64,000 nucleotides of DNA from Ranitomeya imitator (taxonomy: Eukaryota), in contig NC_091284.1 of NCBI RefSeq assembly GCF_032444005.1, positions 673,878,001 to 673,942,000 of the forward strand, read 5' to 3'. Shown here piece by piece: positions 24,980 through 59,310 of this stretch (within the stretch, counting starts at the first letter, position 1; each line of letters starts with the position of its first letter). The notes below the pieces were generated by a model. That model was not told where the DNA came from and ran no database searches. It worked only from the letters and a program-made list of their open reading frames with translations. The position numbers and the translations under genes were made by a program.

Positions 24980-26690
24980 CTAGCTATTGAACCCGTTCTA
25001 CGCCCGGGTGGCGAGCATTTATATTGGTATATTGTCTCCATCATGGTATGTGCTGCTCCATCCTGCGTCCCCATCCTGTCATGCGCTGCTCCATCCTGCG
25101 TCCCCATCCTGTCATGTGCTGCTCCATCCTGCGTCCCCATCCTGTCATGCGCTGCTCCATCCTGCGTTCCCTTTCCTGTCATGCGCTGCTCCCATCCTGC
25201 GTCCCCATCCTGTCATGCGCTGCTCCCATCCTGCGTCCCCATCCTGTGATGCGCTGCTCCCATCCTGTGATGCGCTGCTCCCATCCTGCGTCCCCATCCT
25301 GTGATGCGCTGCTCCATCCTGCGTCCCCATCCTGTCATGCACTGCTCCATCATGCGTCCCCATCCTGTCATGCGCTGCTGCATCCTGCGTCCCCATCCTT
25401 ATGTGCTGCTGCATCCTGCGTCCCCATCCTGTCATGCGCTGCTGCATCCTGCGTCCCCATCCTTATGTGCTGCTGCATCCTGCGTCCCCATCCTTATGTG
25501 CTGCTCCATCCTGCGTCCCCATCCTTATGTGCTGCTCCATCCTGCGTCCCCATCCTTATGTGCTGCTGCATCCTGCGTCCCCATCCTTATGTGCTGCTGC
25601 ATCCTGCGTCCCCATCCTTATGTGCTGCTCCATCCTGTGTCCCCATTTTTATGTGCTGCTCCATCCTGCGTCCCCATCCTTATGTGCTGCTGCATCCTGT
25701 GTCCCCATCCTTATGTGCTGCTCCATCCTGCGTCCCCATCCTTATGTGCTGCTGCATCCTGCGTCCCCATCCTTATGTGCTGCTCCATCCTGTGTCCCCA
25801 TCCTTATGTGCTGCTGCATCCTGCGTCCCCATCCTTATGTGCTGCTCCATCCTGTGTCCCCATTTTTATGTGCTGCTCCATCCTGCGTCCCCATCCTTAT
25901 GTGCTGCTGCATCCTGCGTCCCCATCCTTATGTGCTGCTCCATCCTGCGTCCCCATCCTTATGTGCTGCTGCATCCTGCGTCCCCATCCTTATGTGCTGC
26001 TCCATCCTGCGTCCCCATCCTTATGTGCTGCTGCATCCTGCGTCCCCATCCTTATGTGCTGCTCCATCCTGCGTCCCCATCCTTATGTGCTGCTCCATCC
26101 TGCGTCCCCATCCTTATGTGCTGCTCCATCCTGCGTCCCCATCCTTATGTGCTGCTGCATCCTGCGTCCCCATCCTTATGTGCTGCTCCATCCTGCGTCC
26201 CCATACTGCCTCTGACCCGCTCGGCGCCGAGTGCTGGGGGGCCTGAGCAGGCGGGGACACCGGCGCGCTGTGGGGGTCAGGTGCCGGTATCGCCGCCAGC
26301 TCAGGCCCCCCAGCACTTACTATACTCACCTGTCCGGCGTTCCATCGCTGCGCGCCGCCATCTTCCCGGTCTCCTGGCTGTGACTGTTCAGTCAGAGGGC
26401 GGCGCCGGCGCGCATTAAGCACGTCATCGCGCCCTCTGAACTGAAGGCCACAGACCGAAGACCGGGAAGATGGCGCCGCTCAGCGACGGAACGGGGACAG
26501 GTGAATATGGCCGATACTCACCCTCCTGGCGGTCCCTGCTTCTGCGGTGGAGATCGCGGTGTGTGTTCAGTGTGAACGCACACCGCGATCTCCCGGGAGC
26601 GTCGCTCTGTGAGGCCCAGACTGCGCCGGCGCTTGCGCTTGCGCAGTCTATAGAGGCTTCGGACAGAGTGACGCTCCCAGCGTTATATTA
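24980..26690 (-). mobile_element. Non-autonomous Helitron-like element with internal minisatellite
   Basis: Minus-strand 3' end ACCCG-GGCGTAGAA-CGGGT hairpin, 7 nt, then CTAG|T; inserted in a (TA)n tract with no TSD; 5' end merges into (TA)n near 26690. Confidence 0.65.
25050..26205. repeat. Minisatellite with 33-bp units switching to 31-bp units
   Basis: CCATCCTGCGTCCCCATCCTGTCATGCGCTGCT (33 bp), then CCATCCTGCGTCCCCATCCTTATGTGCTGCT (31 bp). Confidence 0.95.
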
Positions 26691-28937: not shown

Positions 28938-31900
28938 TTAAAATCCTTTTCAAGGAAGGTAAGGTATGGACATAGGGGTGACCTGTATAGAGAGAGGCTG
29001 TATGGGTGCTCAAACTGTACACAAGGTGCTAAGTTTGGGCTCACACTGTATATAGTGGTATTGTGAGGGCTCATTTTCATGGTTGATGAAATCCGTCTTG
29101 TGGTTGTTGTTTAATCTTTATTTTCAGTTTTCAGTTAATAATATGCTCATGCTCCAGAATGGTCTGTCTTTATCTGGTGCTCTGCTTAGGTTTTCAAATT
29201 GATGGCTCCTGACAGGTGACTGATCCCTCAGTGACCTGCCCCTTATTTTACATACTGCATATAATATGTATTAAAAAAACACATTCAGCAAGTGGCGGCA
29301 CCTATAATATGCATTACATTATTTTATTTATTATTCTGAAAAAAAAACAATCTGTCTCAAAATGGCGCCGGCCACACCTGCACAGTGGCATCTACCGGCG
29401 ATTTGATAGATGCTACTGCGCAGACTCTGCCAGCTCCATTTTGCTAGAGGAAAAATAATTGTCTCCACCAAGATGGCGCCAATGTGTGACCCAATGTAGG
29501 ATTTGACTTATGACATTACATTTTCTAGGTCCCCAGTATATTGCTTTTGTGTCATGTTTTTAAGTGTTTTTAAATTTGTTGTTTTGGCTTGTTGTTTATA
29601 ATAAAAATCACCTTTGCTTCTCATTTTTGGTGATCACTGTCTCATACATAGTGCCTTTTTTTGTATTTGATATGTCTCACACTGGAAACACCCACTATTA
29701 TTTATAATTTTCTCTGGAGGCAAAGTCTCATGCAGATCGGTGTCCATAGTCCTGAACAGCTCACTTACATATAAGAAAAGCATGGATTTCTCTGGAATAA
29801 GATATCGGATCGCAGATATCAAGGTATCGTGTTATTCAGCTTCCTATGCTTTGCATGACCATATAGATGGCTTAGGAGGGTTGGCCTGCTGACAGATTAC
29901 CTTTAATTGTATGACTAGGATGATATACAATTTATGTCTCTAGGTTTGTGGGTTCTCCAACAAATCCATTGCTAATTTAAAATATAAACTTTTGTCCATA
30001 ATGTTACGCACGTGGTTGTGGAACCACGGTGCCACTGTCCATGGAGAGGCTGGAGGGGCATAACTAAGCATGCACCTAACTCTTCGCTAGAGCCCCTTAT
30101 GGTAGGGGTTAGATTTGGCTCCAGGTACACGCCAGGTTCTTCTCCAGGTGGACCCACGTAGCCATGGCAGCTTACCCCCACAGGGGAGCAGGAACGGCCA
30201 GTAATTGGTTAGCAGATTTGTACGGCACAAGTGTGACACCCCAGGTAACCGGTTGTCATAGTGATATTGCTTTCCTTTTGGGGAGGTTGATGTCATGCTT
30301 GGAGGCAAGGAGGATTCCCTTTAACAGGTAAAGCAAATACATGCAAAACATTCTGAATCCAGCCCAGAAGGGGGAGTTCTGAATCCGTATTCAGGGGAGC
30401 TTCCTCAGATGTATATACTGTATTTTGGTCTGGAGGAGGAGTTAGTGAGTTGAGCCAGGGACTTGGAGGTGAGAGGAGTGAGAGCAGATTGGAGCCGTGC
30501 AGCCACGTGTGTGCTGCAGCTCCAGTACGGAAGAGAACCAGAAGGGTTGCAGTGATAGTGAGCACTTGAGGGGAGAAGCAAAGGAGAAGAAAGGAGCTTC
30601 GAGGGGAACTGTGATTGGGCACCCTCTGCGCTGAAGCGCAGGAACCAGGCACTGGGAGCCTGAGGGTGTGTCGTACTTCACATCCCGCAGCAGAACCGGA
30701 AAGATAGAAGATTGTATGTCATCTGTCCGCACCCACACCCAAAGGTGCAACAGTACAGAGAGCCTGGGTCATGATAGAGACCCTGTAAAAAGGCTTGCAT
30801 TGCCCACCATACGGGTACTGTCTCAGGACAGGAGAGAGAGGACTTTGTAAGGGAGCCGCAGGCAGCAAGGACCTCAAATAAGAGCACGAGCAGGAAGGCT
30901 TACAAACCTCACCTGGGAGAGGGATCCACCATTGCCTCCAGGCTGGCCGGACCACATCAACTGTTGCTGGTACCCTGGACTGTGGCTTACTACAACCAGT
31001 AAACCAGGTAAAGAGACTGTAATCCTGTGTCCTCTGTTGTGAATTCTGATTTCGGGCTCCCTCCTGTGGTCATGAATGGTACTTCGGCTGGTTCTGTCCA
31101 TGGACTTTCTCTGATGTGTTTCTGAGTTTCCTTCCTCAGGTGACGAGGCTAATTCGTTAGTGGGCTGCTCTATTTAACTCCACTTGGATCTTTGTCCTAT
31201 GCCAGCTGTCAATGTTGTAGCATTGGTCTAGTTCGCTCCTGGATCTTCCTGGTTACCTGTTTTCTCCAGCAGAAGCTAAGTTTCGCTTTGCTTTTTTCTT
31301 GTTTGCTATTTTTTCTGTCCAGCATGCTTATGTGAATTTTGCCTTGCTTGCTGGAAGCTCTGGGACGCAGAGGGGCGCCTCCGCTCCGTTAGTCAGTGCG
31401 GAAGGTATTTTTCCCTGCACTCTCTGTGTGGCTTTTTAGGGTTTTGTGCTGACTGCAAAGTGACCTTTCCTATCTTCTGTCTGTTTAGTAAGTCGGGCCT
31501 CTCTTTGCTAAATCTATTTCATCTCTGTGTTTGTGATTTCATCTTACTCACAGTCAATATATGTGGGGGGCTGCCTTTTCCTTTGGGGAATTTTCTCTGA
31601 GGCAAGATAGGCTTATTTTTCCTATCTCTAGGGCTAGCTAGTTCTGAGGCTGTGACGAGGCGCCTAGGTCATGATAGGAGCGCTCCTCGGCTATTTCTAG
31701 TGTACGTGATAGGATTAGGGATTGCGGTCAGCAGAGGTTCCACTTCCCAGAGCTTGTCCTGTATTAATGTGCTATCAGGTCTTTTCTGGTGCTCTAACTA
31801 CCAGGTCCACTATTTGTTCTAACCAGCAGATCATAACAGTACAGCTGGCCAAAAGTATTGATGCATCTCAATAGAGGGATAAGTGAAGCTCTGAGACCAT

Positions 31901-31974
31901 TTTTTTTTCTTTGCAGCGTGTTCTGTCTCACTTTTCCCCTTTACCTCTGGGTGGTTCAGAACACAGGCGTAGAC

Positions 31975-34900
31975 ATGGACATTCAAGGTCTGTCCTCTTG
32001 GATGGATAATCTCACTACAAGGGTACAAAACATTCAAGATTTTGTGGTTCAGAATCCGATGTCAGAGCCTAGGATTCCAATTCCTGATTTATTTTTTGGT
32101 GATAGATCTAAGTTCTTGAATTTCAAAAATAATTGTAAATTGTTTCTAGCTTTGAAACCTCGCTCCTCAGGTGATCCTGCTCAACAAGTAAGGATCATTA
32201 TTTCTTTGTTACGTGGTAACCCTCAAGACTGGGCATTTTCCCTTGCTCCAGGAGATCCGGCATTGCGCGATGTGGATGAGTTTTTCCTGGCGCTCGGATT
32301 GCTTTATGACGAACCTAATTCAGTGGATCAGGCAGAGAAAATCTTGCTGGCTCTGTGTCAGGGTCAGGATGAAGCAGAGATATATTGTCAGAAGTTTAGA
32401 AAGTGGTCTGTGCTCACTCAGTGGAATGAATGTGCCCTGGCAGCAATCTTCAGAAAGGGTCTCTCTGAAGCCCTTAAAGATGTCATGGTGGGATTTCCCA
32501 TGCCTGCTGGTCTGAATGAGTCTATGTCCTTGGCTATTCAGATCGATCGGCGCTTGCGTGAGCGTAAAACTGTGCACCATTTGGCGGTACTATCTGAGCA
32601 TGGGCCTGAGCCTATGCAGTGTGATAGGACTTTGACCAGAGCTGAACGGCAGGAACACAGACATCGGAATGGGCTGTGTTTTTACTGTTGTGATTCCACT
32701 CATGCTATCTCCGATTGTCCTAAGCGCACTAAGCGGTTCACTAGGTCTGCCACCATTGGTACGGTACAGTCAAAATTTCTATTGTCCGTTACACTGATTT
32801 GTTCTTTGTCTTCCTACTCTGTTATGGCATTTGTGGATTCAGGTGCTGCCCTGAATTTGATGGACTTGGAGTATGCTAGGCGCTGTGGTTTTTTCTTGGA
32901 GCCCTTGCAACATCCTATTCCATTGAGAGGAATTGATGCTACGCCTTTGGCCAAGAATAAGCCTCAGTACTGGACCCAATTGACCATGTGCATGGCTCCT
33001 GCACATCAGGAGGATATCGGTTTTTTGGTGTTACATAATCTGCATGATGTGGTCGTTTTAAGGTTACCATGGCTACAGGTCCATAATCCAGTATTGGACT
33101 GGAAATCTATGTCTGTGTCCAGCTGGGGTTGCCAGGGGGTACATGGTGATGTTCCATTTTTGTCAATTTCGTCTTCTACTCCTTCTGAAGTTCCGGAGTT
33201 TTTGTCGGATTATCAGGATGTATTTGATGAGCCCAAAGCCAGTGCCCTACCTCCTCATTGGGATTGCGATTGTGCAATTAATTTGATTCCTGGTAGTAAG
33301 TTTCCTAAGGGCCGATTGTTCAATTTATCTGTGCCAGAACACGCCGCTATGCGGAATTATATAAAGGAATCCTTGGAGAAAGGCCATATTCGCCCATCGT
33401 CATCACCGTTGGGAGCAGGGTTCTTTTTTGTGAAGGATGGTTCTTTGAGACCTTGTATTGATTACCGCCTTCTTAATAAAATTACTGTCAAATTTCAGTA
33501 TCCTTTGCGGTTGCTGTCCGACTTGTTTGCTCGTATTAAAGGGGCTAGTTGGTTCACCAAGATAGACCTTCGAGGGGCGTATAATCTTGTGCGTATTAAA
33601 CGGGGCGATGAATGGAAAACAGCATTTAATACGCCCGAGGGCCATTTTGAGTACCTGGTGATGCCATTCGGGCTTTCCAATGCTCCATCAGTATTTCAGT
33701 CCTTTATGCATGACATCTTCCGAGAGTACCTGGATAAATTCCTGATTGTGTATTTGGATGATATTTTGGTCTTTTCGCATGATTGGGAGTCTCATGTGAA
33801 GCAGGTCAGAATGGTGTTCCAGGTCCTTCGTGCTAATTCCTTGTTTGTGAAGGGGTCAAAGTGTGTCTTTGGAGTTCAGAAGGTTTAATTTTTGGGGTTC
33901 ATTTTTTCCCTTTCTACTGTCGAGATGGACCCTGTTAAAGTCCAGGCCATTCATGATTGGACTCAGCCGACATCTGTGAAGAGCCTGGAAAAGTTCCTGG
34001 GCTTTGCTAATTTTTATCGTTGCTTCATCGCTAATTTTTCTAGTGTTGCTAAACCGTTGACTGATTTGACCAAGAAGGGTGCTGATGTGGTCAATTGGTC
34101 TTCTGCGGCCGTGGATGCTTTTCAGGAATTGAAGCGTCGTTTTTCTTCTGCCCCTGTGTTGTGCCAGCCAGATGTTTCGCTCCCGTTTCAGGTTGAGGTT
34201 GATGCCTCTGAGATTGGAGCAGGGGCTGTTTTGTCGCAAAGAAGTTCTGATTGCTCGGTGATGAAGCCATGTGCTTTCTTTTCTAGAAAGTTTTCGCCTG
34301 CTGAGCGCAATTATGATGTTGGTAATCGAGAATTGTTGGCCATGAAGTGGGCATTCGAGGAGTGGCGTCATTGGCTTGAAGGAGCCAAGCATCGCGTGGT
34401 GGTCTTGACAGATCACAAAAATTTGACTTATCTTGAGTCTGCCAAACGGTTGAATCCGAGACAGGCTCGATGGGCGTTATTTTTCTCCCGTTTTGATTTT
34501 GTGGTTTCGTACCTTCCGGGCTCTAAGAATGTGAAGGCTGATGCCCTGTCAAGGAGTTTTGTGCCTGACTCTCCGGGTGTTTCTGAGCCGGCAGGTATTC
34601 TCAAAGAGGGGATAATTTTGTCTGCCATCTCCCCTGATTTGCGGCGGGTGCTGCAAAAATTTCAGGCTGATAGACCTGACCGTTGCCCAGCAGAGAAACT
34701 GTTTGTCCCTGATAAATGGACTAGCAGAGTTATCTCTGAGCTTCATTGTTCGGTGTTGGCTGGGCATCCTAGAATCTTTGGTACCAGAGATTTGGTGGCT
34801 AGATCCTTTTGGTGGCCTTCTTTGTCACGGGATGTGCGTTCTTTTGTGCAGTCCTGTGGGACTTGTGCTCGGGCTAAGCCCTGCTGTTCTCATGCTAGTG

Positions 34901-36030
34901 GGTTGCTTTTGCCCTTGCCGGTCCCGAAGAGGCCCTGGACGCATATTTCTATGGATTTTATTTTGGATCTCCCCGTCTCTCAAAAGATGTCGGTCATTTG
35001 GGTGGTTTGTGATCGCTTTTCTAAGATGGTCCATTTTGGTACCCTTGTCTAAATTGCCTTCCTCCTCTGATTTGGTGCCATTGTTTTTCCAGCATGTGGT
35101 TCGTTTACATGGCATTCCGGAGAACATCGTTTCGGACAGAGGTTCTCAGTTTGTTTCGAGGTTTTGGCAATCCTTTTGTGCTAGGATGGGCATTGATTTG
35201 TCTTTTTCCTCGGCTTTCCATCCTCAGACAAATGGCCAAACCGAACTAACTAATCAGACGTTGGAAACATATCTGAGATGCTTTGTTTCTGCTGATCAGG
35301 ATGGTTGGGTGTCCTTTTTGCCGTTGGCTGAGTTTGCCCTTAATAATCGGGCCAGCTCGGCTACTTTGGTTTCGCCGTTTTTCTGCAATTCTGGTTTCCA
35401 TCCTCGTTTCTCTTCAGGGCAGGTTGTGTCTTCGGACTGTCCTGGTGTAGATACTGTGGTGAATAGGTTGCAGCAGATTTGGACTCATGTGGTGGACAAT
35501 TTGACATTGTCCCAGGAGAAGGCTCAGCGTTTCGCTAACCGCCGGCGCTGTGTGGGTCCCAGACTTCGTGTTGGGGATTTAGTTTGGTTGTCATCTCGTT
35601 ATGTTCCTATGAAGGTTTCCTATCCTAAGTTTAAGCCTCGTTTCATTGGTCCGTATAAAATTTCTGAGGTTATCAATCCTGTGTCATTTCGTTTGGCCCT
35701 TCCAGATTCTTTTGCCATCCATAATGTGTTCCATAGGTCGTTGCTGCGGAGATACGTGGCGCCTGTGGTTCCATCCGTTGACCCTCCTGCTCCGGTGTTG
35801 GTTGAGGGGGAGTTGGAGTATGTGGTGGAGAAGATTTTGGATTCTCGTATTTCGAGACGGAAACTCCAGTACTTGGTCAAGTGGAAGGGTTATGGTCAGG
35901 AGGATAATTCCTGGGTTTTTGCCTCTGATGTTCATGCGGCCGATCTGGTTTGTGCCTTTCATTTGGCTCATCCTGGTCGGCCTGGGGGCTCTCGTGAGGG
36001 TTCGGTGACCCCTCCTCAAGAGGGGGGTAC
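31975..36030 (+). pseudogene. Gag-pol polyprotein of Gypsy copy 1 (gag-CCHC-PR-RT-RH-IN-chromodomain), disrupted
   Basis: MDIQG start; CFYCCDSTHAISDC knuckle; FVDSGA protease; YLDD; RNase H DASE/ELLA/TDH; HHCC and DDE integrase; chromodomain LEYVVEKILDSR...YLVKWKGY..EDNSW. Nonsense TAA at 33886-33888 and +1 frameshift near 35035. Confidence 0.93.
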
Positions 36031-37126
36031 TGTTGTGAATTCTGTTTTCGGGCTCCCTCCTGTTGTCATGAATGGTACTTCGGCTGGTTCTGTCCATGGA
36101 CTTTCTCTGATGCCTGTGGGTGTTTCTGAGTTTCCTTCCTCAGGTGACGAGGCTAATTCGTTAGTGGGCTGCTCTATTTAACTCCACTTGGATCCTTGTC
36201 CTATGCCAGCTGTCAATGTTGTAGCATTGGTCTAGTTCGCTCCTGGATCTTCCTGGTTACCTGTTTTCTCCAGCAGAAGCTAAGTTTTGCTTTGCTTTTT
36301 TCTTGTTTGCTATTTTTTCTGTCCAGCATGCTTATGTGAATTTTGCCTTGCTTGCTGGAAGCTCTGGGACGCAGAGGGGTGCCTCCGCTCCGTTAGTCGG
36401 TGCGGAAGGTATTTTTTCTATTCGCCACGACAGCACCCACTAGAGAGAGGGGATCCGCCCCTAGGAACAGGAAACCTACAGAGAGATAAAAGGGGCGGCC
36501 CCCCCTCGCTCCTCAGTTGGTTTCCTGTTCCTAGATGGAGACCCACAGAGAAGACTCTATGGATAGGAAGAGGAAGACCTGCCTGGACTACCGCCTGTAC
36601 GACTCTGCTGAGCGGCAGGGGTTCCAGAAGCAGGTAGACAGAGTCGGGGGAATGATCCTGCGGGCTCCCCCCTCATCTGGTGCGGCTGACAGGCAGCCTG
36701 AAGTTATCCAACGGTCTCCCTGCTGGGACACCGTTGTGGAGACGCCGACAGTGCGGGTACCTGGTGCGACGTCCTCCGGTGTGCGTCTGGGCAGCGGTGA
36801 GACGGTTCCACGATACGAGGCCCTCCTGTCCCTCCAAGGTAAGAGGTGACATGGTGGGATGCAGCAGGCAGCGGCGTCTCCCGGCATACAGGACGCGGGC
36901 GCATGCGCAGTAGCGTCGGCGTCCCGGAAATGGAGAGGAACTTCCGGGGCACGGTGTTGGAGGTCATTTCCGGGGGAACCGCCATATTGGATTCCCCCAT
37001 GTGGTGCCATTACTCTAAACGCCGGATCTGTAAGTAAAAAAAAAAAAAAAAAGTGGAGACAAAGCAAGGGGTGTGTACATTACTACACTATAAAGTGTAG
37101 TCAGTTAAGGCAGTCAGTGTGCCATT

Positions 37127-38603
37127 ATGTCGTCCCAAGAGGAGGTCAGGGTGCACCCTATGGAAGAGCCATTAGTCCCTAGTGGTGAAGCCAGGAAAAG
37201 GAATAGTGGACACTCTAAAATAAGTGACTCCACTGATAAATCAGGAAGAAAATCCTCCCGTTCCACACCCCAAGCTAAGGCATCTCCGCAGCCGGTATAA
37301 ATATTACGCTGGGTGAGTGCGTATATAGCTTCACTGAAGCTTATATTGATTCCTTTGCTTATATTATTTCTAGGCAAAGAGGACGGGGAAGAGTAAGCAC
37401 AAACAATGTGCCATATGTACCGAACCCCTGCCTGACTCCTATCTTAAAAGTCTGTGTCAGGCATGTATAGACAACACCTTACGGCAGGAGGAATCGGTTA
37501 AAATGAATGAGATACGTCTCATAATTCGGGAAGAACTCCAGTCGTTGGGAGGTGGTTCTACTTCTTCAGTAAATATGGAGAAACGAAGGAGGAAAACATC
37601 CTCTCCTAGAGCTGACACATCAGCGGAGAGTGGGGAGGTCGACTCTGATATTTCTCAGCAATCTAATTCCTCAGAGGAAGAGGACTTCGTCTGTTTTCCA
37701 ACTGAGGGCATAAACAACCTAGTAAAATCAGTGAGAAATACGATGGGGGTGTCTGAATCAAAAGAACCCCAGACGCCACAAGAAGTTATGTTCGCTGGTC
37801 TTTCTCAGAAGAAAGGCCACGTATTTCCAATAAATCAGGCCATAAAAGATCTCGTTAAAAAAGAATGGAGTAGAGGTCAAAAGGGGTTGGTCCCAATATC
37901 CTGTAAGAGGCGCTACCCCTTTGATGATGAGGATTTGAATACCTGGGCCAAGATACCAAAAGTCGATGCGGCAGTTGCGTCTACATCTCGCCGTTTCTCC
38001 TTACCAGTAGAGGATGCAGGTTCCTTATCAGATCCTATGGACCGGAAATCAGACGCACTCCTTAAAAAATCGTGGGAGGCCTGTGTCACGGCATTCAAGC
38101 CGGCTATTTCAGCCACATGTACTGGCAGATCAATGCTAGTCTGGCTGGATCAGCTGGATCAGAAGATTAAAAGTGGCGTATCTAGAGAAAAATTAAGGGC
38201 ATCTATCCCTTTGATTAAAGGTGCTGCGGCTTTTATTTCAGATGCCTCAATTGATTCCCTCCGCCTGGCGGCCAGGACAGCTAATCTCGCTAATACGGCT
38301 CGGCGGGCTTTATGGTTAAAAAACTGGAAGGGGGATGCCCAGTCAAGATCCAAATTATGTTCCATACCCTGTCAGGGTGAGTACCTGTTTGGCACAGTCC
38401 TTGATGATATTCTCACTAAGGCGGGCGAGAGGAAGAAAGGATTCCCTAATCCCTTTATTCCGTCTTACAGAAGGGCGTTCAGGAAGCCACCATTCGGAAG
38501 AAAGGGAGGCTTCAGAGACAGGTGGAATAATAAGGATTTCAAACAAAAAGGAAATCTGTTTAATAAACGCCCCTTCAAGCCAACCGATAAATTCCATCAG
38601 TGA
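37127..38603 (+). CDS. DIRS ORF1 (gag-like); probably spliced join(37127..37294, 37374..38603), ~465 aa
   Basis: Open ORF 37503..38603 extends in frame upstream to an acceptor TTTCTAG|GCA at 37374 and includes C-x2-C-x12-C-x2-C; phase-0 donors at 37295 (GTATAA) and 37313 (GTGAGT). Splicing is inferred. Confidence 0.75.
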
Positions 38604-40494
38604 TATTTCTCCGGTGGGGGGAAGACTAAAACAATTCAGTCATCAATGGAAAGAAATAACAACTAATCAATGGGCTATTAAATTAACATCCTCAGGCCTC
38701 ACACTAGACTTTATTAAAACTCCTCCGGATTCTTTCCTTCTTACCACCTTAAGATCCAAGCCTCAGCAAGAGGCACTTGAAACCGAGGTTAAAACCCTCC
38801 TACGCAAACATGTCCTAGTAGAGGTTCCATCTTCTCAGATAGGGAGAGGTTTTTACTCTCCCTTGTTCCTGATTAGTAAGCCGGATGGCTCTTTCAGAAC
38901 TATAATCAATTTGAGGAAGCTGAATTCCTTTATAAAACCTAAAACATTCAAAATGGAATCCATTCGTTCAGCTATAAAAAATCTATTTCCAAATTGTTAC
39001 ATGGTAGTATTGGATCTAAAAGATGCTTACTACCATATTCCCATTCATAATTCACACCAACAATTTCTTCGGGTAGCAGTTTGTATAGAGGGGCAAATTC
39101 GTCATTTACAATATAGAGCAATGCCCTTCGGGTTATCTATGGCCCCAAGGATTTTTACTAAGATACTATCAGAAGTAATGTCCTTTTTACGGGTAAAGGA
39201 TACTTTGGTCATTCCATATCTAGATGACCTGTTGATTGTAGGAAAGAGCCCCCTACAGTGTGAGCAGAGATTACGGGAAGTAGTCATATCCTTACAATCC
39301 CTGGGTTGGCTAGTTAATTGGGAAAAATCTAGACTTCAGCCTGTAACGTGTCAAAGATTCCTTGGGCTCCTTCTGGATTCCGTTGACCAGATTTGTAAAC
39401 TGCCTGAGGATAAGAAATTCTCCATAGTTGATAAGGTGTCCTCAGCAATAAAAAGACGTAGTATGTCACTAAGACAGGTCATGTCATTGCTAGGCTTTCT
39501 AACATCGTGCATTCCTGTGGTACAGTGGGCACAGTTCCATACTAGGCAGCTACAAAAATTTGTATTGGAGGAGGACATTAAGAATAGAGGATGTCTGGAT
39601 AGAACAGTTTTTCTAACATCGGAAGTATTACACTCCCTTAGGTGGTGGTTGGATCAGAATAATCTTTCAAAGGGGGTTCTATGGGTAATCACTCCTTCTA
39701 GTGTTGTGACCACAGATGCTAGTCCTGAAGGCTGGGGGGCACATTTTCAGGATCAATGGGTTCAGGATCTTTGGTCCAGCTCAGATCTTAATAATACCTC
39801 GAATGTCAAGGAGTTGAGGGCGGTATATTACTCCCTTCTCCACTTTCTTCCCCAGCTCAGCGGCTCTCATACAAGAGTATTCTCCGACAACACCACTGCG
39901 GTGGCGTATCTGAACCATCAGGGAGGTACAAGGTCGGACAAACTCAGGGAGGTGGCATCAGACATCATGGAATTAGCCGAAGGTCATCTACTATCACTAT
40001 CGGCAGTACACATCAGAGGCACAGACAACTTTCGTGCCGATTTCCTGAGCCGTCATACTCTTCATCAAGGGGAATGGATGCTGAGCAGGAAGATTTTCAA
40101 GGCAATAACAGCTCGATGGGGTGTTCCTCAAATAGACTTGTTTGCCACAAGAGCCAACCGTCAAGTCAAGATGTTTGCCTCTCTAAACAGGGAGGACAAG
40201 CCAGACATACTCGATGCCCTCCAGACGCCATGGACATTCGATCTGGCCTATGCTTTCCCTCCATGGAATCTATTACCTATAGTAATAAGAAAAATAAGGG
40301 AGGAGGGCGCAAAAGTTCTGTTGATAGCCCCATTTTGGCCCAAGAGGCCATGGTTCTCATGGCTGAGGGCGATGTCAGTGTCAGATCCATGGATTCTGCC
40401 TCAGTCCAAGGACCTGCTCTCTCAGGGTCCATTCCTCCATCCTCAGGCAAAGGGCATGAACTTAACTGCCTGGAGTTTGAGAGGCGGTTACTAA
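38335..40494 (+). CDS. DIRS ORF2: reverse transcriptase - RNase H - adenine-methyltransferase-like domain
   Basis: VLDLKDAYYHIP, AMPFGLSMAPRIF, PYLDD; RNase H TTDAS/ELRAV/SDN/ADFLSR; C-terminal IDLFAT...YAFPPW. Open for 719 codons; true start uncertain. Confidence 0.92.
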   Translation: MPSQDPNYVPYPVRVSTCLAQSLMIFSLRRARGRKDSLIPLFRLTEGRSGSHHSEEREASETGGIIRISNKKEICLINAPSSQPINSISDISPVGGRLKQFSHQWKEITTNQWAIKLTSSGLTLDFIKTPPDSFLLTTLRSKPQQEALETEVKTLLRKHVLVEVPSSQIGRGFYSPLFLISKPDGSFRTIINLRKLNSFIKPKTFKMESIRSAIKNLFPNCYMVVLDLKDAYYHIPIHNSHQQFLRVAVCIEGQIRHLQYRAMPFGLSMAPRIFTKILSEVMSFLRVKDTLVIPYLDDLLIVGKSPLQCEQRLREVVISLQSLGWLVNWEKSRLQPVTCQRFLGLLLDSVDQICKLPEDKKFSIVDKVSSAIKRRSMSLRQVMSLLGFLTSCIPVVQWAQFHTRQLQKFVLEEDIKNRGCLDRTVFLTSEVLHSLRWWLDQNNLSKGVLWVITPSSVVTTDASPEGWGAHFQDQWVQDLWSSSDLNNTSNVKELRAVYYSLLHFLPQLSGSHTRVFSDNTTAVAYLNHQGGTRSDKLREVASDIMELAEGHLLSLSAVHIRGTDNFRADFLSRHTLHQGEWMLSRKIFKAITARWGVPQIDLFATRANRQVKMFASLNREDKPDILDALQTPWTFDLAYAFPPWNLLPIVIRKIREEGAKVLLIAPFWPKRPWFSWLRAMSVSDPWILPQSKDLLSQGPFLHPQAKGMNLTAWSLRGGY

Positions 40495-41510: not shown

Positions 41511-42920
41511 TCTCTGCAATTCTCTCTAGTGGGTGCTGTCGTGGCGAATAGAAAATACCGGATTACGTACCGGTAATGCTCTTTTATAGAGCCCACGACA
41601 GCACCCGTTCACATCCCTCCCTTTTCTGTATATAGTTGCACATGGTGCTTGTTTGGTGAGGTGTAAATATTAGAAAGATATAATATGAGGTTGTAAATAT
41701 GTGTATATATGTATATACCTGAACCTGTTAACTAAAACTTGGCGGCGGTTCCTCCTATTCTCTGTAAAACAACTGAGGAGCGAGGGGGGGCCGCCCCTTT
41801 TATCTCTCTGTAGGTTTCCTGTTCCTAGGGGCGGATCCCCTCTCTCTAGTGGGTGCTGTCGTGGGCTCTATAAAAGAGCATTACCGGTACGTAATCCGGT
41901 ATTTCCCTGCACTCTCTGTGTGGCTTTTTAGGGTTTTGTGCTGACTGCAAAGTGACCTTTCCTATCTTCTGTCTGTTTAGTAAGTCGGGCCTCTCTTTGC
42001 TAAATCTATTTCATCTCTGTGTTTGTGATTTCATCTTACTCACAGTCAATATATGTGGGGGGCTGCCTTTTCATTTGGGGAATTTTCTCTGAGGCAAGAT
42101 AGGCTTATTTTTCCTATCTCTAGGGCTAGCTAGTTCTGAGGCTGTGAGGAGGCGCCTAGGTCATGATAGGAGCGCTCCACGGCTATTTCTAGTGTACGTG
42201 ATAGGATTAGGGATTGCGGTCAGCAGAGGTTCCACTTCCCAGAGCTTGTCCTGTATTAATGTGCTATCAGGTCTTTTCTGGTGCTCTAACTACCAGATCC
42301 ACTATTTGTTCTAACCACCAGATCATAACAGTCCTCTGTTAATTCTGGCACCACGCCACTCTAGCCAAACACACCGGGAGCCCTGGGGACCCAGTTTCAC
42401 CTGTGGATCTTTGCTGCAGCACCATTGCTCCCAGAGGACCCCTTTAAGCAAAGTCTGTCACCCCTGACCAAGTACCACAGGTGGCGTCACGAACTTTTAT
42501 TATTTTCGCAACCTCTTTATAGACTGTTCCTTTTACTTGGGTGCCCAGGGCAATGACCAGGTTGCCGCCACCGTGACCACCCCTTTAATAACGACCGAAC
42601 CTGGTACCTACGGCCCTGGCGGGCATTCTACAAGCAAGACAGGACAGGACAGGACCCCTGGACGACCAAAATACAGGATAGCAGCTGCAGATTCTCATGT
42701 CCAAGTTCAGACTGGGTAGACTAGCGGGCACAGGTACAGGACAGACGGATCAGAATCAGGACTCAGCATAGGCAGGACAGACTCGGGTATGGGAATAGCA
42801 GGGTGGACTGGGACAGGAATTGACTGGGCAGAATGGATCAGGAGCACTGAGACATTACAACTGACTAGTAGGAAACACTAGAACTAACTAAGTTGCTAAG
42901 TCATCTCCCAATAGAGGAGG

Positions 42921-53616: not shown

Positions 53617-56600
53617 TGTTATGGACCTGGTGGTTAGGAGCACCCGAAAAGACCTGATGGTTAAACTAACAAGGACAAGCTCTGGGAAGTGGGAGCTCTG
53701 CTGACCGCAACCCCTAATCCTATCACACACACTAGAAATGGCCGTGGAGCGTTCCTGAGTCTCCCTAGATGCCTCTTCACAGCCTAAGAGCTAACTAGCC
53801 CTAGAGATAGAAAATAAAGCCTACCTTGCCTCGGAGAAATTCCCCAAAGGTAAAGGAAGCCCCCCACATATATTGACTGTGAGTTAAGATGAAAGTCACA
53901 AACACAGAAATGAAACAGGTTTCAGCAAAGGGAGGCCAGACTTACTAAACAGACTGAGGATAGGAAAGGTATCTTTGCGGTCAGCACAAAAAACTACAAA
54001 AAGACCACGCAGAGTGTGCAAAAAGACCTCCGCACCGACTCACGGTACGGAGGTGCCACTCTGCATCCCAGAGCTTCCAGCTAGCAAGGCAAAATCATGA
54101 TAGCAAGCTGGACAAGAAAACAATGAACAAATAATAAACTAGCAGGGACTTAGCTTCTGCTGGAGTAGACAGGTCACCAGAAAGATCCAAGACCGAACTG
54201 AACCAGTACAAGAACATTGACAGCTGGCATAAAGTAACGATCTGAGTGGAGTTAAATAGAGCAGCCAGCCAAAGAATTAAACTAAATCACCTGTGGAAGG
54301 AACCTCAGAAGCAGCAGCTCCACTCACAGCCACCAGAGGGAGTCCATGGACAGAACTCGCCGAAGTACCATTCATGACCACAGGAGGGAGTTCGATAACA
54401 GAATTCACAACAGTACCCCCTCCCCTTGAGGAGGGGTCACCGAACCCTCACCAGAGCCCCCAGGTCGATTAGGACGAGCCAAATGAAAGGCACGAACTAG
54501 ATCGGCCGCATGAACATCAGAGGCAAAAACCCAGGAATTATCTTCCTGACCATAACCCTTCCACTTGACCAGGTGCTGGAGTTTCCGTCTCGAAATATGA
54601 GAATCCAAAATCTTCTCCACCACATACTCCAACTCCTCCTCGACCAACACCGGGGCAGGAGGATCAACGGAGGGAACCATAGGCGCCACGTATCTCCGCA
54701 ACAACGACCTATGGAACACATTATGGATGGAAAAAGAAGCTGGAAGGGCCAAATGAAAAGACACAGGATTGAGAACTTCAGAAATCTTATACGGACCAAT
54801 GAAACGAGGCTTAAACTTAGGAGAGGAAACCTTCATAGGAACATAACGAGACGACAACCAAACCAAATCCCCAACACGAAGTCGGGGACCAACACAGCGC
54901 CGGCGGTTAGCGAAACGTTGAGCCTTCTCCTGGGACAATGTCAAATTGTCCACCACATGAGTCCAAATCTGCTGCAACCTGTCCACCACAGTATCCACAC
55001 CAGGACAGTCCGAAGGCTCAACCTGCCCTGAAGAGAAACGAGGATGAAAACCAGAATTACAGAAAAACGGCGAAACCAAAGTAGCCGAGCTGGCCCGATT
55101 ATTAAGGGCGAACTCAGCCAAAGGCAAGAAGGACACCCAATCACCCTGATCAGCAGAAACAAAGCATCTCAGATATGTTTCCAACGTCTGATTAGTTTGT
55201 TCGGTTTGGCCATTTGTCTGAGGATGGAAAGCCGAAGAAAAAGACAAATCAATGCCCATCTTAGCACAAAAGGACCGCCAAAACCTCGAAACAAACTGAG
55301 AACCTCTGTCCGAGACGATGTTCTCCGGAATGCCATGCAAATGAACCACATGCTGGAAAAACAATGGCACCAAATCAGAGGAAGAAGGCAACTTAGACAA
55401 GGGTACCAAATGGACCATCTTAGAGAAGCAATCACAAACCACCCAAATGACCGACATCCTCTGAGAGACAGGGAGATCTGAAATAAAATCCATGGAAATA
55501 TGCGTCCAGGGCCTCTTCGGGACTGGCAAGGGCAAAAGCAACCCACTGGCACGAGAACAGCAGGGCTTAGCCCGAGCACAAGTCCCACAGGACTGCACAA
55601 AAGAACGCACATCCCGTGACAAAGAAGGCCACGAAAAGGATCCAGCCACCAAATCTCTGGTACCAAAGATTCCAGGATGACCAGCCAACACCAAACAATG
55701 AACCTCAGAGATAACTCTACCAGTCCATCTATCAGGGACAAACAGTTTCTCCGCTGGACAACGGTCAGGTCTATCAGCCTGAAACTTCTGCAACACCCGC
55801 CGCAAATCAGGGGAGATGGCAGACAAAATTACCCCCTCTTTGAGAATACCCGCCGGCTCAGGAACACCCGGAGAGTCAGGCACAAAACTCCTTGACAGGG
55901 CATCAGCCTTCACATTCTTAGAGCCCGGAAGGTACGAAACCACAAAATCAAAATGGGAGAAAAACAGCGACCATCGAGCCTGTCTAGGATTCAACCGTTT
56001 GGCAGACTCGAGATAAGTCAAATTCTTGTGATCCGTCAAAACCACCACGTGATGCTTGGCTCCTTCAAGCCAATGTCGCCACTCCTCGAATGCCCACTTC
56101 ATGGCCAACAACTCTCGATTGCCAACATCATAATTGTGCTCAGCAGGTGAGAACTTTCTAGAAAAGAAGGCACATGGTTTCATCACCGAGCCATCAGAAC
56201 TTCTTTGCGACAAAACAGCCCCTGCTCCAATCTCAGAAGCATCAACCTCGACCTGGAACTGGAGCGAAACATCTGGCTGACACAACACAGGGGCAGAAGA
56301 AAAACGACGCTTCAACTCCTGAAAAGCCTCTATAGCCGCAGAGGACCAATTGACCACATCAGCACCTTTCTTGGTCAAATCTGTCAACGGTTTAGCAACA
56401 CTAGAAAAATTAGCGATGAAGCAACGGTAAAAATTAGCAAAGCCCAGGAACTTCTGCAGGCTCTTCACAGATGTCGGCTGAGTCCAATCATAAATGGCCT
56501 GAACTTTAACAGGGTCCATCTCGATATTAGAAGGGGAAAAAATGCAACCCAAAAATGAAACCTTCTGAACTCCAAAGAGACACTTTGACCCCTTCACAAA

Positions 56601-59310
56601 CAAGGAATTCGCACGAAGGACCTGGAACACCATTCTGACCTGCTTTACATGAGACTCCCAATCATCCGAAAAGACCAAAATATCATCCAAATATACAATC
56701 ATGAATCTATCCAGGTACTCTCGGAAGATGTCATGCATAAAGGACTGAAATACAGATGGAGCATTAGAGAGCCCGAATGGCATAACCAGGTGCTCAAAAT
56801 GGCCCTCGGGCGTATTAAATGCTGTTTTCCATTCATCGCCCTGTTTAATACGCACAAGATTATACGCCCCTCGAAGATCTATCTTGGTGAACCAACTAGC
56901 CCCCTTAATCCGAGCAAACAAATCAGACAGCAGCGGCAAAGGGTACTGAAATTTGACTGTGATCTTATTAAGTAGGTGGTAATCAACACAAGGTCTCAAA
57001 GAACCATCCTTCTTGGCCACAAAAAAGAACCCTGCTCCCAACGGTGATGACGACGGGCGAATATGACCTTTCTCCAAGGATTCCTTTATATAACTCCGCA
57101 TAGCGGCGTGCTCTGGCACAGATAAATTGAACAGTCGGCCCTTAGGAAACTTACTACCAGGAATCAAATTAATAGCACAATCGCAATCCCTATGGGGAGG
57201 TAGGGCACTGGATTTGGGCTCATCAAATACATCCCGGTAATCCGACAAAAATTCAGGAACTTCAGAAGGAGTGGAAGGCGAAATTGACAACAATGGAACA
57301 TCACCATGTACCTCTTGACAACCCCAGCTGGACACAGACATAGATTTCCAATCCAAAACTGGATTATGGACCTGTAGCCATTTCAACCCCAAAACGACCA
57401 CATCATGCAGATTATGCAACACCAAAAAGCGAATATCCTCCTGATGTGCAGGAGCCATGCACATGGTCAATTGAGTCCAGTACTGAGGCTTATTCTTGGC
57501 CAAAGGCGTAGCATCAATTCCTCTCAATGGAATAGGATACTGCAAAGGCTTCAAGAAAAAACCACAGTGCCTGGCAAACTCCAAGTCCATCAAATTCAGG
57601 GCAGCGCCTGAATCCACAAATGCCATAACAGAATAGGACGACAAAGAGCAAATCAGAGTAACGGACAAAAGAAATTTAGACTGTACCGTACCAATGGTGG
57701 CAGACCTAGCGAACCGCTTAGTGCGCTTAGGACAATCGGAGATAGCATGAGTGGAATCACCACAGTAAAAACACAGCCCATTCCGACGTCTGTGTTCTTG
57801 CCATTCAGCTCTGGTCAAAGTCCTATCACATTGCATAGGCTCAGGCCTATGCTCAGAGAATACCGCCAAATGTTGCACAGCTTTGCGCTCCCGCAAGCGC
57901 CGATCGATCTGAATGGCCAAGGACATAGACTCATTCAGACCAGCAGGCGTGGGAAATCCCACCATGACATCCTTAAGGGTTTCAGAAAGACCCTTTCTGA
58001 AAATTGCCGCCAGGGCACACTCATTCCACTGAGTAAGCACAGACCACTTTCTAAACTTCTGACAATATACCTCCACCTCATCCTGACCCTGACGCAAAGC
58101 CAGCAAGATTTTCTATGCCTGATCCACTGAATTTGGTTCATCATAAAGCAATCCAAGCGCCAGAAAAAATGCATCTACATCACGCAATGCAGGATCTCCT
58201 GGCGCAAGGGAAAATGCCCAGTCTTGAGGGTCACCACGCAACAAAGAAATAATGATTTTTACTTGTTGAACGGGGTCACCAGAGGAGCGGGGTTTCAAAG
58301 CAAGAAACAGTTTACAATTATTTTGAAATTCAGGAACCTAGATCTATCCCCAGAAAACAAATCAGGAATAGGAATTCTAGGCTCTAACATCGGATTCTGA
58401 ACCACAAAATCTTGAATGTTTTGTACCCTTGCAGTGAGATGATCCACACAAGAGGACAGACCTTGAATGTCCATATCTACACCTGTGTCCTGAACCACCC
58501 AGAGGTTAAGGGGAAAAGAAAGACAAAACACGCTGCAGAGAAAAAAAAAAGGTCTCAGAACTTCTCTTATCCCTCTATTGAGATGCATTAATACTTTGGG
58601 CCAGCTGTACTGTTATGGACCTGGTGGTTAGGAGCACCCGAAAAGACCTGATGGTTAAACTAACAAGGACAAGCTCTGGGAAGTGGGAGCTCTGCTGACC
58701 GCAACCCCTAATCCTATCACACACACTAGAAATAGCCGTGGAGCGTTCCTGACTCTCCCTAGACGCCTCTTCACAGCCTAAGAGCTAACTAGCCCTAGAG
58801 ATAGAAAATAAAGCCTACCTTGCCTCAGACAAATTCCACAAAGGTAAAGGAAGCCCCCCACATATATTGACTGTGAGTTAAGATGAAAGTCACAAACACA
58901 GAAATGAAACAGGTTTCAGCAAAGGGAGGCCAGACTTACTAAACAGACTGAGGATAGGAAAGGTATCTTTGCGGTCAGCTAGCAAGGCAAAATCATGATA
59001 GCAAGCTGGACAAGAAATCAATGAACAAATAATAAACTAGCAGGGACTTAGCTTCTGCTGGAGTAGACAGGTCACCAGAAAGATCCAAGACCGAACTGAA
59101 CCAGTACAAGAACATTGACAGCTGGCATAGAGTAACGATCTGAGTGGAGTTAAATAGAGCAGCCAGCCAAAGAATTAAACTAAACCACCTGTGGAAGGAA
59201 CCTCAGAAGCAGCAGCTCTACTCACAGCCACCAGAGGGAGTCCATGGACAGAACTCGCCGAAGTACCATTCATGACCACAGGAGGGAGTTCGATAACAGA
59301 ATTCACAACA
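53617..59310 (-). mobile_element. Gypsy/chromovirus LTR retrotransposon copy 2 (5' LTR 58611..59310; 3' LTR 53617..54412)
   Basis: TG...CA LTRs; PPT at ~54413-54430; GGGGAT duplicated at 53611-53616 and 59311-59316. Confidence 0.96.
54405..58106 (-). CDS. Open 1233-codon gag(C-terminal)-PR-RT-RH-IN-chromodomain frame of Gypsy copy 2
   Basis: CFYCGDSTHAISDC, FVDSGA, YLDD, DASE/TDH, HHCC+DDE integrase and chromodomain. The upstream gag start (ATG at 58474) is disconnected by a 1-bp deletion (~58322) and TAG at 58115-58113. Confidence 0.9.
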   Translation of the reverse strand: MLALRQGQDEVEVYCQKFRKWSVLTQWNECALAAIFRKGLSETLKDVMVGFPTPAGLNESMSLAIQIDRRLRERKAVQHLAVFSEHRPEPMQCDRTLTRAEWQEHRRRNGLCFYCGDSTHAISDCPKRTKRFARSATIGTVQSKFLLSVTLICSLSSYSVMAFVDSGAALNLMDLEFARHCGFFLKPLQYPIPLRGIDATPLAKNKPQYWTQLTMCMAPAHQEDIRFLVLHNLHDVVVLGLKWLQVHNPVLDWKSMSVSSWGCQEVHGDVPLLSISPSTPSEVPEFLSDYRDVFDEPKSSALPPHRDCDCAINLIPGSKFPKGRLFNLSVPEHAAMRSYIKESLEKGHIRPSSSPLGAGFFFVAKKDGSLRPCVDYHLLNKITVKFQYPLPLLSDLFARIKGASWFTKIDLRGAYNLVRIKQGDEWKTAFNTPEGHFEHLVMPFGLSNAPSVFQSFMHDIFREYLDRFMIVYLDDILVFSDDWESHVKQVRMVFQVLRANSLFVKGSKCLFGVQKVSFLGCIFSPSNIEMDPVKVQAIYDWTQPTSVKSLQKFLGFANFYRCFIANFSSVAKPLTDLTKKGADVVNWSSAAIEAFQELKRRFSSAPVLCQPDVSLQFQVEVDASEIGAGAVLSQRSSDGSVMKPCAFFSRKFSPAEHNYDVGNRELLAMKWAFEEWRHWLEGAKHHVVVLTDHKNLTYLESAKRLNPRQARWSLFFSHFDFVVSYLPGSKNVKADALSRSFVPDSPGVPEPAGILKEGVILSAISPDLRRVLQKFQADRPDRCPAEKLFVPDRWTGRVISEVHCLVLAGHPGIFGTRDLVAGSFSWPSLSRDVRSFVQSCGTCARAKPCCSRASGLLLPLPVPKRPWTHISMDFISDLPVSQRMSVIWVVCDCFSKMVHLVPLSKLPSSSDLVPLFFQHVVHLHGIPENIVSDRGSQFVSRFWRSFCAKMGIDLSFSSAFHPQTNGQTEQTNQTLETYLRCFVSADQGDWVSFLPLAEFALNNRASSATLVSPFFCNSGFHPRFSSGQVEPSDCPGVDTVVDRLQQIWTHVVDNLTLSQEKAQRFANRRRCVGPRLRVGDLVWLSSRYVPMKVSSPKFKPRFIGPYKISEVLNPVSFHLALPASFSIHNVFHRSLLRRYVAPMVPSVDPPAPVLVEEELEYVVEKILDSHISRRKLQHLVKWKGYGQEDNSWVFASDVHAADLVRAFHLARPNRPGGSGEGSVTPPQGEGVLL

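What the first reader, a model, noticed from the sequence alone, without database searches (positions are those of the whole stretch)
31171..31849. Self-priming (tRNA-independent) reverse-transcription signature in Gypsy copy 1
Seen: no TGG-type tRNA primer site follows the 5' LTR; the sequence is CA|GT-ACAGCTGGC (31841-31849). Its exact reverse complement GCCAGCTGT lies in the LTR at 31201-31209, 30 nt downstream of a TATA-like TATTTAA (31171), where a TSS is expected. The 2-nt spacer GT mirrors the AC between the PPT and the 3' LTR, predicting symmetric AC-TG...CA-GT cDNA ends. Established: fission-yeast Tf1 primes reverse transcription with its own 5' end, and the Tf1/sushi chromovirus group is proposed to share this. 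Inference: this amphibian family self-primes with a ~9-nt RNA 5' end looping over ~640 nt.
Basis: partly seen in the sequence, partly recalled or inferred. Interest (0 to 1): 0.8.

Follow-up and report, generated by a model that had tools for sequence, protein, structure and literature searches.

The report
Self-priming signature in frog chromovirus
A frog LTR retrotransposon carries, right after its 5' repeat, a 9-base site that pairs with the predicted first 9 bases of its own RNA, so it most likely starts reverse transcription with its own 5' end instead of a tRNA, which is real here but already the expected habit of this element group.

Summary
TATTTAA lies at 31171. GCCAGCTGT lies at 31201-31209, 30 nt after it. 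Its reverse complement ACAGCTGGC lies at 31841-31849, 2 nt past the 5' LTR (31035-31838). Taken alone the match is only modestly unlikely: 48 of 2000 LTR shuffles gave a 9-nt or longer match anywhere, and 0 of 2000 gave one at that position.

Comparison settles it. I examined nine elements: both window copies plus seven fetched chromoviruses with 37-55% protein identity. They carry seven different primer/PBS sequences. Each primer begins with G, 30-32 nt after a TATA-like box. Each is perfectly Watson-Crick complementary (63 of 63 pairs) to a site 1-2 nt after the LTR's terminal CA (TA in L009, whose LTR end was not confirmed). Seven of nine positions show compensatory changes. Folding predicts the 5'-end:PBS helix with probability of mostly 0.8-1.0. 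No element has a TGG-type PBS.

The element has a chromodomain integrase, and its nearest relatives are Ranitomeya imitator copies. Self-priming is already described as a common feature of the Tf1/sushi group, vertebrates included. This is therefore a new member of a known kind.

The transcription start site, the RNase H cleavage and the priming itself remain unmeasured.

The parts
31029..31034 (+). Target-site duplication of copy 1, left copy (GTCCTC, 6 bp)
   Evidence: Identical hexamer at 42331-42336 directly after the 3' LTR
31035..31838 (+). 5' LTR of chromovirus copy 1 (804 nt, TGTTG...TAACA)
   Evidence: 97.7% identical to the rejoined 3' LTR. Ends defined by TG/CA, PPT and TSD
31171..31177 (+). 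TATA-like box TATTTAA, the only one in the LTR
   Evidence: CTATTTAA or a similar AT box sits at the same distance in eight related elements
31201..31209 (+). Putative self-primer: predicted first 9 nt of the genomic RNA (GCCAGCTGT), with the start site inferred at G31201
   Evidence: Exact complement of 31841-31849. Lies 30 nt after the TATA T, with a pyrimidine at -1 and G at +1 as in all relatives
31556..31561 (+). AATATA followed by a G/T-rich run: the only poly(A)-signal-like hexamer in R-U5. This is a weak candidate for the R/U5 border
   Evidence: The block is conserved between the copies. Function not shown
31839..31840 (+). GT spacer between the LTR's CA and the PBS. Predicted to be the 2 nt that integrase trims from the cDNA end
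   Evidence: Present after both 5' LTRs. Copy 2's 3' LTR is followed by AT instead
31841..31849 (+). Primer-binding site ACAGCTGGC
   Evidence: Helix with 31201-31209 appears in the MFE and centroid structures, pair probabilities 0.93-1.00. Duplex energy -16.1 kcal/mol
31975..36008 (+). gag-PR-RT-RNaseH-IN-chromodomain coding region of copy 1. It is broken by an in-frame stop at 33886-33888 and a frameshift in the 34703-35052 overlap
   Evidence: ORF list. Pfam RVT_1, RT_RNaseH, Integrase_H2C2, rve, SH3_Tf2-1 and Chromo
36018..36030 (+). Polypurine tract AAGAGGGGGG followed by TAC, directly before the 3' LTR
36031..36416 (+). 3' LTR of copy 1, first part. It carries its own TATTTAA and GCCAGCTGT (36205-36213)
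41902..42330 (+). 3' LTR of copy 1, second part, after the nested insertion (junction uncertain by about 3 nt)
42331..42336 (+). Target-site duplication of copy 1, right copy (GTCCTC)
58611..59310 (-). 5' LTR of copy 2 (700 nt, with an internal deletion of about 100 nt). Self-primer at 59118-59126, TATA box inside 59146-59159
58600..58608 (-). PBS of copy 2 (ACAGCTGGC on the minus strand), 2 nt (GT) after its 5' LTR
53617..54412 (-). 3' LTR of copy 2, with the self-primer sequence at 54220-54228

Best explanation
Copies 1 and 2 belong to one family of vertebrate chromoviruses: Ty3/gypsy elements with a chromodomain integrase, in the Tf1/sushi kind. The family initiates minus-strand DNA synthesis by self-priming.

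Shown: the PBS 2 nt after the 5' LTR is exactly complementary to a 9-mer in the LTR that lies 30 nt after the only TATA-like box. The same layout, with different but always complementary sequences, is present in seven related elements.

Inferred: transcription starts at G31201. The first 9 nt of the RNA fold back over about 640 nt of R-U5 onto 31841-31849. The element's RNase H cuts the RNA just after the duplex, by analogy with Tf1, which is cut between nt 11 and 12. The freed 3'-OH is then extended through GT and U5-R. Plus-strand strong-stop DNA later copies the primer and rewrites the PBS. That rewriting explains why the primer and PBS stay perfectly complementary while diverging between families. 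Integrase would trim the GT, and at the other end the bases between PPT and TG, before insertion.
For: The motifs are exact and the LTR limits were fixed independently. A 9-nt or longer match was rare in shuffles: 48 of 2000 anywhere and 0 of 2000 at that position. Both window copies have LTRs only about 82% identical to each other, yet both keep the TATA box, the 9-mer and the GT+PBS unchanged. Across nine elements there are seven distinct primer/PBS pairs. All start with G, 30-32 nt after a TATA-like box, and sit 1-2 nt after the LTR end. All 63 of 63 pairs are Watson-Crick, and 7 of 9 positions show two to four pair types. Swapped partners average 5.6 of 9 pairs. A single-step compensatory example is GCCTGTTATT/AATAACAGGC (L005) against GCCAGTTATT/AATAACTGGC (L008). 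The helix is present in the MFE and centroid structures, with pair probabilities of mostly 0.8-1.0 and a low of 0.47 at one terminal pair, in all leaders. No element has TGG within 6 nt of the LTR. The element has Chromo and SH3_Tf2-1 integrase domains, and Ty3 is the best solved relative. The literature states that self-priming is a common feature of the Tf1/sushi group, with the first 11 nt of Tf1 RNA pairing with the PBS (PMC10085805, PMC7175516, PMC4600332, PMC6317226).
Against: No RNA data were available, so the start site at 31201 rests on TATA spacing and a pyrimidine/purine start dinucleotide only. Within the family the two copies are identical at both 9-mers, so covariation is shown only between families. 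More copies from Ranitomeya imitator could not be fetched. The two flanking duplexes of the Tf1 'pretzel' structure are no better than shuffled controls. The duplex is 9 bp, against 10-11 bp in relatives and 11 bp in Tf1. The loop, at 516-638 nt, is the longest seen. No canonical AATAAA is present in the LTR. The host tRNA set could not be searched.
Confidence: 0.85

Rival explanations
1. Chance complementarity. A 9-mer with a palindromic CAGCTG core happens to recur in the LTR, and priming uses something else.
For: 48 of 2000 shuffled LTRs gave a match of 9 nt or more somewhere. The core is palindromic.
Against: 0 of 2000 shuffles gave a match at the observed position. There is only one CAGCTG in the LTR. 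Seven independent sequences in relatives show the same positional rule with perfect pairing.
Confidence: 0.03
2. Priming by a host tRNA. The primer would be either a 3' end annealing at TGGCCAAAAG... (31846 onward) or an internal tRNA fragment complementary to 31841-31849.
For: A TGG exists 7 nt after the LTR. Half-tRNA priming is known in some copia lineages (PMC6317226). The host tRNA set could not be searched, and no tRNA genes were found in the window or the loci.
Against: An 8-nt gap between LTR and PBS would be unusual. Copy 2 has two substitutions in that putative 18-mer but none in the 9-mer. Relatives L003, L004 and L006 have no TGG at all in the first 25 nt. A tRNA primer gives no reason for each LTR to carry the matching sequence 30 nt after its TATA box.
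Confidence: 0.07
3. The LTR 9-mer is conserved as a promoter element, either an E-box (CAGCTG) or an initiator. Its match to the post-LTR sequence would have a different role, such as RNA packaging or dimerisation, rather than priming.
For: The 9-mer sits at the predicted start site and contains an E-box. The block is conserved between the copies.
Against: Relatives have no E-box at that site yet keep the complementarity. The partner lies exactly where a PBS must lie, 1-2 nt after the LTR end. No other PBS candidate exists.
Confidence: 0.05

Closest known systems
Tf1 and Tf2 of Schizosaccharomyces pombe (founding self-primed LTR retrotransposons)
   Same: Both are chromodomain-bearing Ty3/gypsy elements. 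The PBS next to the 5' LTR is complementary to the 5' end of the element's own RNA, and there is no tRNA-type PBS (PMC7175516, PMC10085805).
   Different: The duplex is 9 bp against 11 bp, and the loop is about 640 nt (the Tf1 loop length was not looked up). Support for the flanking 'pretzel' duplexes is lacking here. The host is a frog, and priming has not been shown experimentally.
Vertebrate V-clade chromoviruses (sushi-ichi of Takifugu, Amn-san of Xenopus tropicalis and relatives)
   Same: Same host range and domain layout. Self-priming has been proposed for vertebrate Tf1/sushi elements (Butler et al. 2001, as cited in PMC10085805, PMC4600332 and PMC6317226). The V-clade is reported in fish, amphibians and amniotes (PMC2774666). 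The seven fetched relatives share the layout of TATA box, 30 nt, then primer.
   Different: The family is distinct: its gag was found only in Ranitomeya imitator at 51-98% identity (most hits 73-96%), and the next best hits are 37-38%. It has a 2-nt spacer, where most fetched relatives have 1 nt. It has 6-bp TSDs against 5 bp, and the longest R-U5 among the elements compared. Reference sequences of sushi-ichi and Amn were not available for a tree.
Tj1 of S. japonicus and Tcn1-like elements of fungi and non-seed plants
   Same: Self-priming was predicted from the same kind of sequence evidence: an LTR segment complementary to the PBS (PMC4600332, PMC6317226).
   Different: These are distant hosts. 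Tj1 was shown to be active, whereas the window copies are both broken.

Membership tests
Tf1-type self-primed LTR retrotransposons (mechanistic class) | The PBS directly downstream of the 5' LTR is complementary to a segment inside the same LTR | tested here: met
   9 of 9 nt, 2 nt after CA, in both copies. Shuffle control
Tf1-type self-primed LTR retrotransposons (mechanistic class) | The complementary segment is the very 5' end of the element's mRNA | not testable with these tools
   No RNA data. Indirect support: the segment starts with G after a pyrimidine, 30 nt after TATTTAA, and the same spacing of 30-32 nt holds in all nine elements
Tf1-type self-primed LTR retrotransposons (mechanistic class) | Primer and PBS co-vary between related elements | tested here: met
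   Seven distinct pairs, 63 of 63 Watson-Crick pairs, and 7 of 9 positions with two or more pair types. Swapped partners average 5.6 of 9
Tf1-type self-primed LTR retrotransposons (mechanistic class) | Three-duplex 'pretzel' RNA structure around the primer:PBS helix (PMC10085805) | tested here: inconclusive
   The central helix is predicted with probability of mostly 0.8-1.0. The flanking duplexes are no better than shuffles, and only L004's U5-end duplex stands out
Tf1-type self-primed LTR retrotransposons (mechanistic class) | RNase H cleavage after the primer and extension from it | not testable with these tools
   Needs cDNA and primer analysis in cells or virus-like particles
Tf1/sushi group (Fungi/Vertebrates cluster of chromoviruses, V-clade) | Ty3/gypsy domain order PR-RT-RNaseH-IN with a C-terminal chromodomain | tested here: met
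   Pfam hits in order on copy 2's 1233-aa ORF and on copy 1's pieces. Ty3 Gag-Pol is the best PDB match, E 6e-131
Tf1/sushi group (Fungi/Vertebrates cluster of chromoviruses, V-clade) | Phylogenetic grouping with Tf1, sushi-ichi or Amn reference elements | not tested
   No reference sequences were obtainable through the tools. The nearest homologues are frog and fish chromoviruses at 40-55% identity, some with PEG10/RTL-type gag
tRNA-primed LTR retroelements | PBS starting TGG within a few nt of the LTR, complementary to a tRNA 3' end | tested here: not met
   The first TGG is 7 nt in and lies inside the self-complementary 9-mer. Several relatives have none
tRNA-primed LTR retroelements | Match of the PBS to a host tRNA or tRNA half | not testable with these tools
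   No host tRNA set. ARAGORN found no tRNA genes in the window or in nine loci. There were no Rfam hits in 31000-32000

The most novel reading that the evidence does not exclude
The base immediately 3' of the PBS is C in all ten elements examined, which carry eight distinct PBS sequences. The base before the predicted start site is T or C, so this C cannot extend the duplex. One reading is that it is a replication footprint of the capped 5' end of the self-primer. When plus-strand strong-stop DNA copies the primer to its end, reverse transcriptase may add a C opposite the cap G, and only genomes with C at PBS+1 would then transfer without a 3' mismatch. If so, the invariant C marks the exact transcription start from sequence alone. 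It would also show that the cap takes part in self-primed replication. This family's 6-bp target duplications and 2-nt spacer (relatives: 5 bp and 1 nt) would be a separate variant of integrase end-processing.
Probability: 0.15. Interest if true: 0.55.

Novelty: new member of a known kind. Interest (0 to 1): 0.3.

Why it matters
This is a clean, sequence-only demonstration that a young and abundant dendrobatid-frog chromovirus family carries the Tf1-type self-priming layout. The layout is TATA box, 30 nt, a primer starting with G, then R-U5, CA, 1-2 nt and the PBS. It is conserved, with compensatory change, across vertebrate chromoviruses of 37-55% protein identity. In practice this gives annotators a rule for finding the PBS and the likely start site in these elements, where LTR-finding tools that expect tRNA sites report 'no PBS'. 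It does not change what is known about how such elements replicate.

Tried and rejected
- Same-family copies from Ranitomeya imitator could not be fetched because the sample file is too large. A Dendrobates tinctorius gene model spanned too long a range.
- L007 held only 30 nt of its LTR, so its predicted primer could not be checked.
- The bacterial-type promoter/terminator scan is irrelevant to a Pol II LTR.
- Rfam gave no hit in 31000-32000.
- ARAGORN found no tRNA genes to test as primers.
- The search for Tf1-like flanking 'pretzel' duplexes with RNAduplex gave energies no better than shuffles.
- No canonical poly(A) hexamer was found in the window LTR, only AATATA at 31556.
- The original papers of Levin 1995, Lin and Levin 1998, and Esnault and Levin 2015 are not held. 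Butler et al. 2001 was not looked up and is known here only through citing papers.
Relatives have G, T or GT after the LTR end, and CTC, CTCC or TAC before TG.

Full report
**What is at the site.** The window holds two copies of one LTR retrotransposon family.

- Copy 1 is on the plus strand. Its 5' LTR is 31035-31838 (TG...CA) and its internal region is 31839-36030.
- Its 3' LTR is split into 36031-36416 and about 41902-42330 by a 5.5-kb nested insertion.
- Copy 1 is flanked by a 6-bp target-site duplication, GTCCTC (31029-31034 and 42331-42336).
- Copy 2 is on the minus strand. Its 5' LTR is 58611-59310, its 3' LTR is 53617-54412, and its duplication is ATCCCC.
- The coding region has Retrotrans_gag (weak), RVT_1, RT_RNaseH, Integrase_H2C2, rve, SH3_Tf2-1 and Chromo domains in that order.
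- The best solved relative is Ty3 Gag-Pol, E 6e-131. The element is therefore a chromovirus within Ty3/gypsy.
- Copy 1 is broken by an in-frame stop at 33886-33888 and a frameshift near 34703-35052. Copy 2 keeps a 1233-aa ORF but has lost the start of gag.
- The closest proteins in the public collection are Ranitomeya imitator copies at 72-95% identity. The gag of this family was found only in that species. The window therefore probably comes from a dendrobatid frog.

- TATTTAA at 31171 is the only TATA-like motif in the LTR.
- GCCAGCTGT starts 30 nt after the first T of that motif.
- The LTR ends with CA at 31837-31838. GT follows, then ACAGCTGGC at 31841-31849.
- The complementarity is exactly 9 bp.
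- GT is not part of the LTR, because copy 2's 3' LTR is followed by AT.
- The only TGG near the LTR is 7 nt in and lies within the 9-mer.
- In dinucleotide-preserving shuffles of the LTR, a match of 9 nt or more starting 0-4 nt after the LTR appeared somewhere in 48 of 2000 trials. It appeared within 3 nt of the observed place in 0 of 2000.
- CAGCTG occurs once in the LTR. In all 64 kb the two 9-mers occur only at the six equivalent LTR and PBS sites of the two copies.

Taken alone, the match is suggestive but not compelling. Its position is what makes it unusual.

**Within the family.** The LTRs of copies 1 and 2 are only about 82% identical. Even so, the TATA block, the block TATGCCAGCTGTCAATGTT and CA-GT-ACAGCTGGCC are unchanged. 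This is conservation, not covariation. More copies of the family could not be fetched.

**Between families.** This is the decisive evidence. I fetched DNA around seven related chromovirus genes with 37-55% protein identity: L001/L002, L003, L004, L005, L006, L008 from Eleutherodactylus coqui, and L009. I delimited their LTRs from the repeats, PPTs and target duplications. In every one, the sequence starting 1-2 nt after the LTR end is the exact reverse complement of a 10-11-nt segment inside the LTR. The LTR ends in CA in all but L009, which reads TA and whose LTR end was not confirmed. That segment begins with G, follows a pyrimidine, and lies 30-32 nt after the first T of a TATA-like box (mostly CTATTTAA).

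| Element | Primer segment in the LTR |
|---|---|
| Window copies 1 and 2 | GCCAGCTGT |
| L001 / L002 | GTTCAGTCTTG |
| L003 and L006 | GCGAAGTCTT |
| L004 | GCGGTTTATA |
| L005 | GCCTGTTATT |
| L008 | GCCAGTTATT |
| L009 | GCTGGTTTAT |

Over the first nine positions all 63 pairs are Watson-Crick, and seven positions show two to four different pair types. Primers paired with the PBS of another element average 5.6 of 9 pairs. L005 and L008 differ by one base in the primer and by the matching base in the PBS.

**Folding.** The 670-nt leader from 31201 folds with nt 1-9 paired to 31841-31849 in both the MFE and the centroid structure. Pair probabilities for that helix are 0.93-1.00 in the window copies and mostly 0.8-1.0 in the relatives, apart from 0.73 and 0.47 at two terminal pairs. 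The window's 9-bp duplex is the shortest but the most stable, at -16.1 kcal/mol against -12.2 to -15.3. A short adjoining helix, UGUUGU with AUAACA at the U5 end, is predicted in copy 1. The two flanking duplexes that make up the Tf1 'pretzel' were not better than shuffled controls, so that feature is left open.

**Mechanism.**

- Shown: the layout, its conservation and its covariation.
- Inferred from Tf1: the first 11 nt of Tf1 RNA pair with the PBS, and RNase H cuts between nt 11 and 12 (PMC7175516). The structure requirement is described in PMC10085805.
- By that analogy, transcription starts at G31201 and the 5' nine nucleotides pair with the PBS across about 640 nt.
- RNase H then cuts after the duplex, and the 3'-OH is extended through GT into U5 and R.
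- Plus-strand strong-stop synthesis copies the primer and so rewrites the PBS each cycle. That accounts for perfect complementarity alongside divergence between families.
- The GT after CA would be the two bases trimmed by integrase. The AC before TG fits this for this family. Relatives have other spacers, so the symmetry is not a rule.
- The R/U5 border is unknown. There is no AATAAA or ATTAAA in the LTR, only a conserved AATATA with a G/T-rich run at 31556.

**Rivals.** Chance is excluded by the positional rule across seven sequences. A tRNA primer cannot be excluded by search, because no host tRNA set was available and ARAGORN found none in the window or loci. It would, however, need an 8-nt gap. 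It is not supported in relatives that lack any TGG. It also gives no reason for the LTR to carry the matching sequence. A purely transcriptional role for the E-box-like 9-mer does not explain the complementary partner at the PBS position, and relatives lack the E-box.

[quoted passage not shown] It has been implicated from fungi to vertebrates (PMC10085805, PMC4600332, PMC6317226, all citing Butler et al. 2001, which is known here only through these citations). The vertebrate V-clade is reported in fish, amphibians and amniotes (PMC2774666). The finding is therefore a new member of a known kind. I did not build a tree with Tf1, sushi-ichi or Amn references because no such sequences were available from the tools. 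Group membership rests on the chromodomain architecture, the vertebrate chromovirus homologues and the shared priming layout.

**Verdict.** Confidence that the family self-primes is about 0.85. Novelty is low and interest is 0.3. The main residual uncertainty is the lack of any RNA or cDNA evidence.

Noticed in passing
window 36417-41901 (+): A 5.5-kb DIRS1-like retroelement is nested in the 3' LTR of copy 1. It has three overlapping open ORFs: a LAP2alpha-like gag, RVT_1, and a weak match to the tyrosine-recombinase family Phage_integrase. It also has 110-nt inverted terminal repeats (36414-36523 and 41766-41875, 95%) and a 54-nt internal complementary region (41553-41606 against 41851-41904). 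It looks intact and young.
   Followed up: partly
window 31029-31034 / 42331-42336 and 59311-59316 / 53611-53616: Both copies of this family have 6-bp target-site duplications (GTCCTC and ATCCCC). The fetched relatives L001, L002, L003 and L006 have 5 bp. The family also has a 2-nt rather than 1-nt spacer between CA and the PBS.
   Followed up: partly
window 31850 and 58599; L001-L009 at PBS+1: The base immediately after the PBS is C in all ten elements (eight distinct PBS types). The base before the predicted start site is T or C, so this C cannot extend the helix. It may be a footprint of the capped primer end. This is unexplained.
   Followed up: partly
window 58611-59310 versus 53617-54412 (-): Copy 2's 5' LTR lacks about 100 nt that are present in its own 3' LTR and in copy 1 (alignment columns 358-459). 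The two LTRs are otherwise 98-99% identical. Copy 1 has an extra 24 nt just before the LTR end relative to copy 2.
   Followed up: no
window 25310-26353 and 4515-5556: Two tandem arrays: about 1 kb with a 31-bp period, and about 1 kb with 55-59-bp periods.
   Followed up: no
window 47331-47544: A run of 214 N (assembly gap or masked). It was left untouched.
   Followed up: no
L004 (ENA contig, 6124 nt) and L005 (Logan contig, 4900 nt): L004 continues from the 3' LTR straight into a second leader and gag. That indicates either a tandem LTR-internal-LTR-internal array or an assembly collapse. L005 has a 30-nt overlap between its two ends.
   Followed up: no
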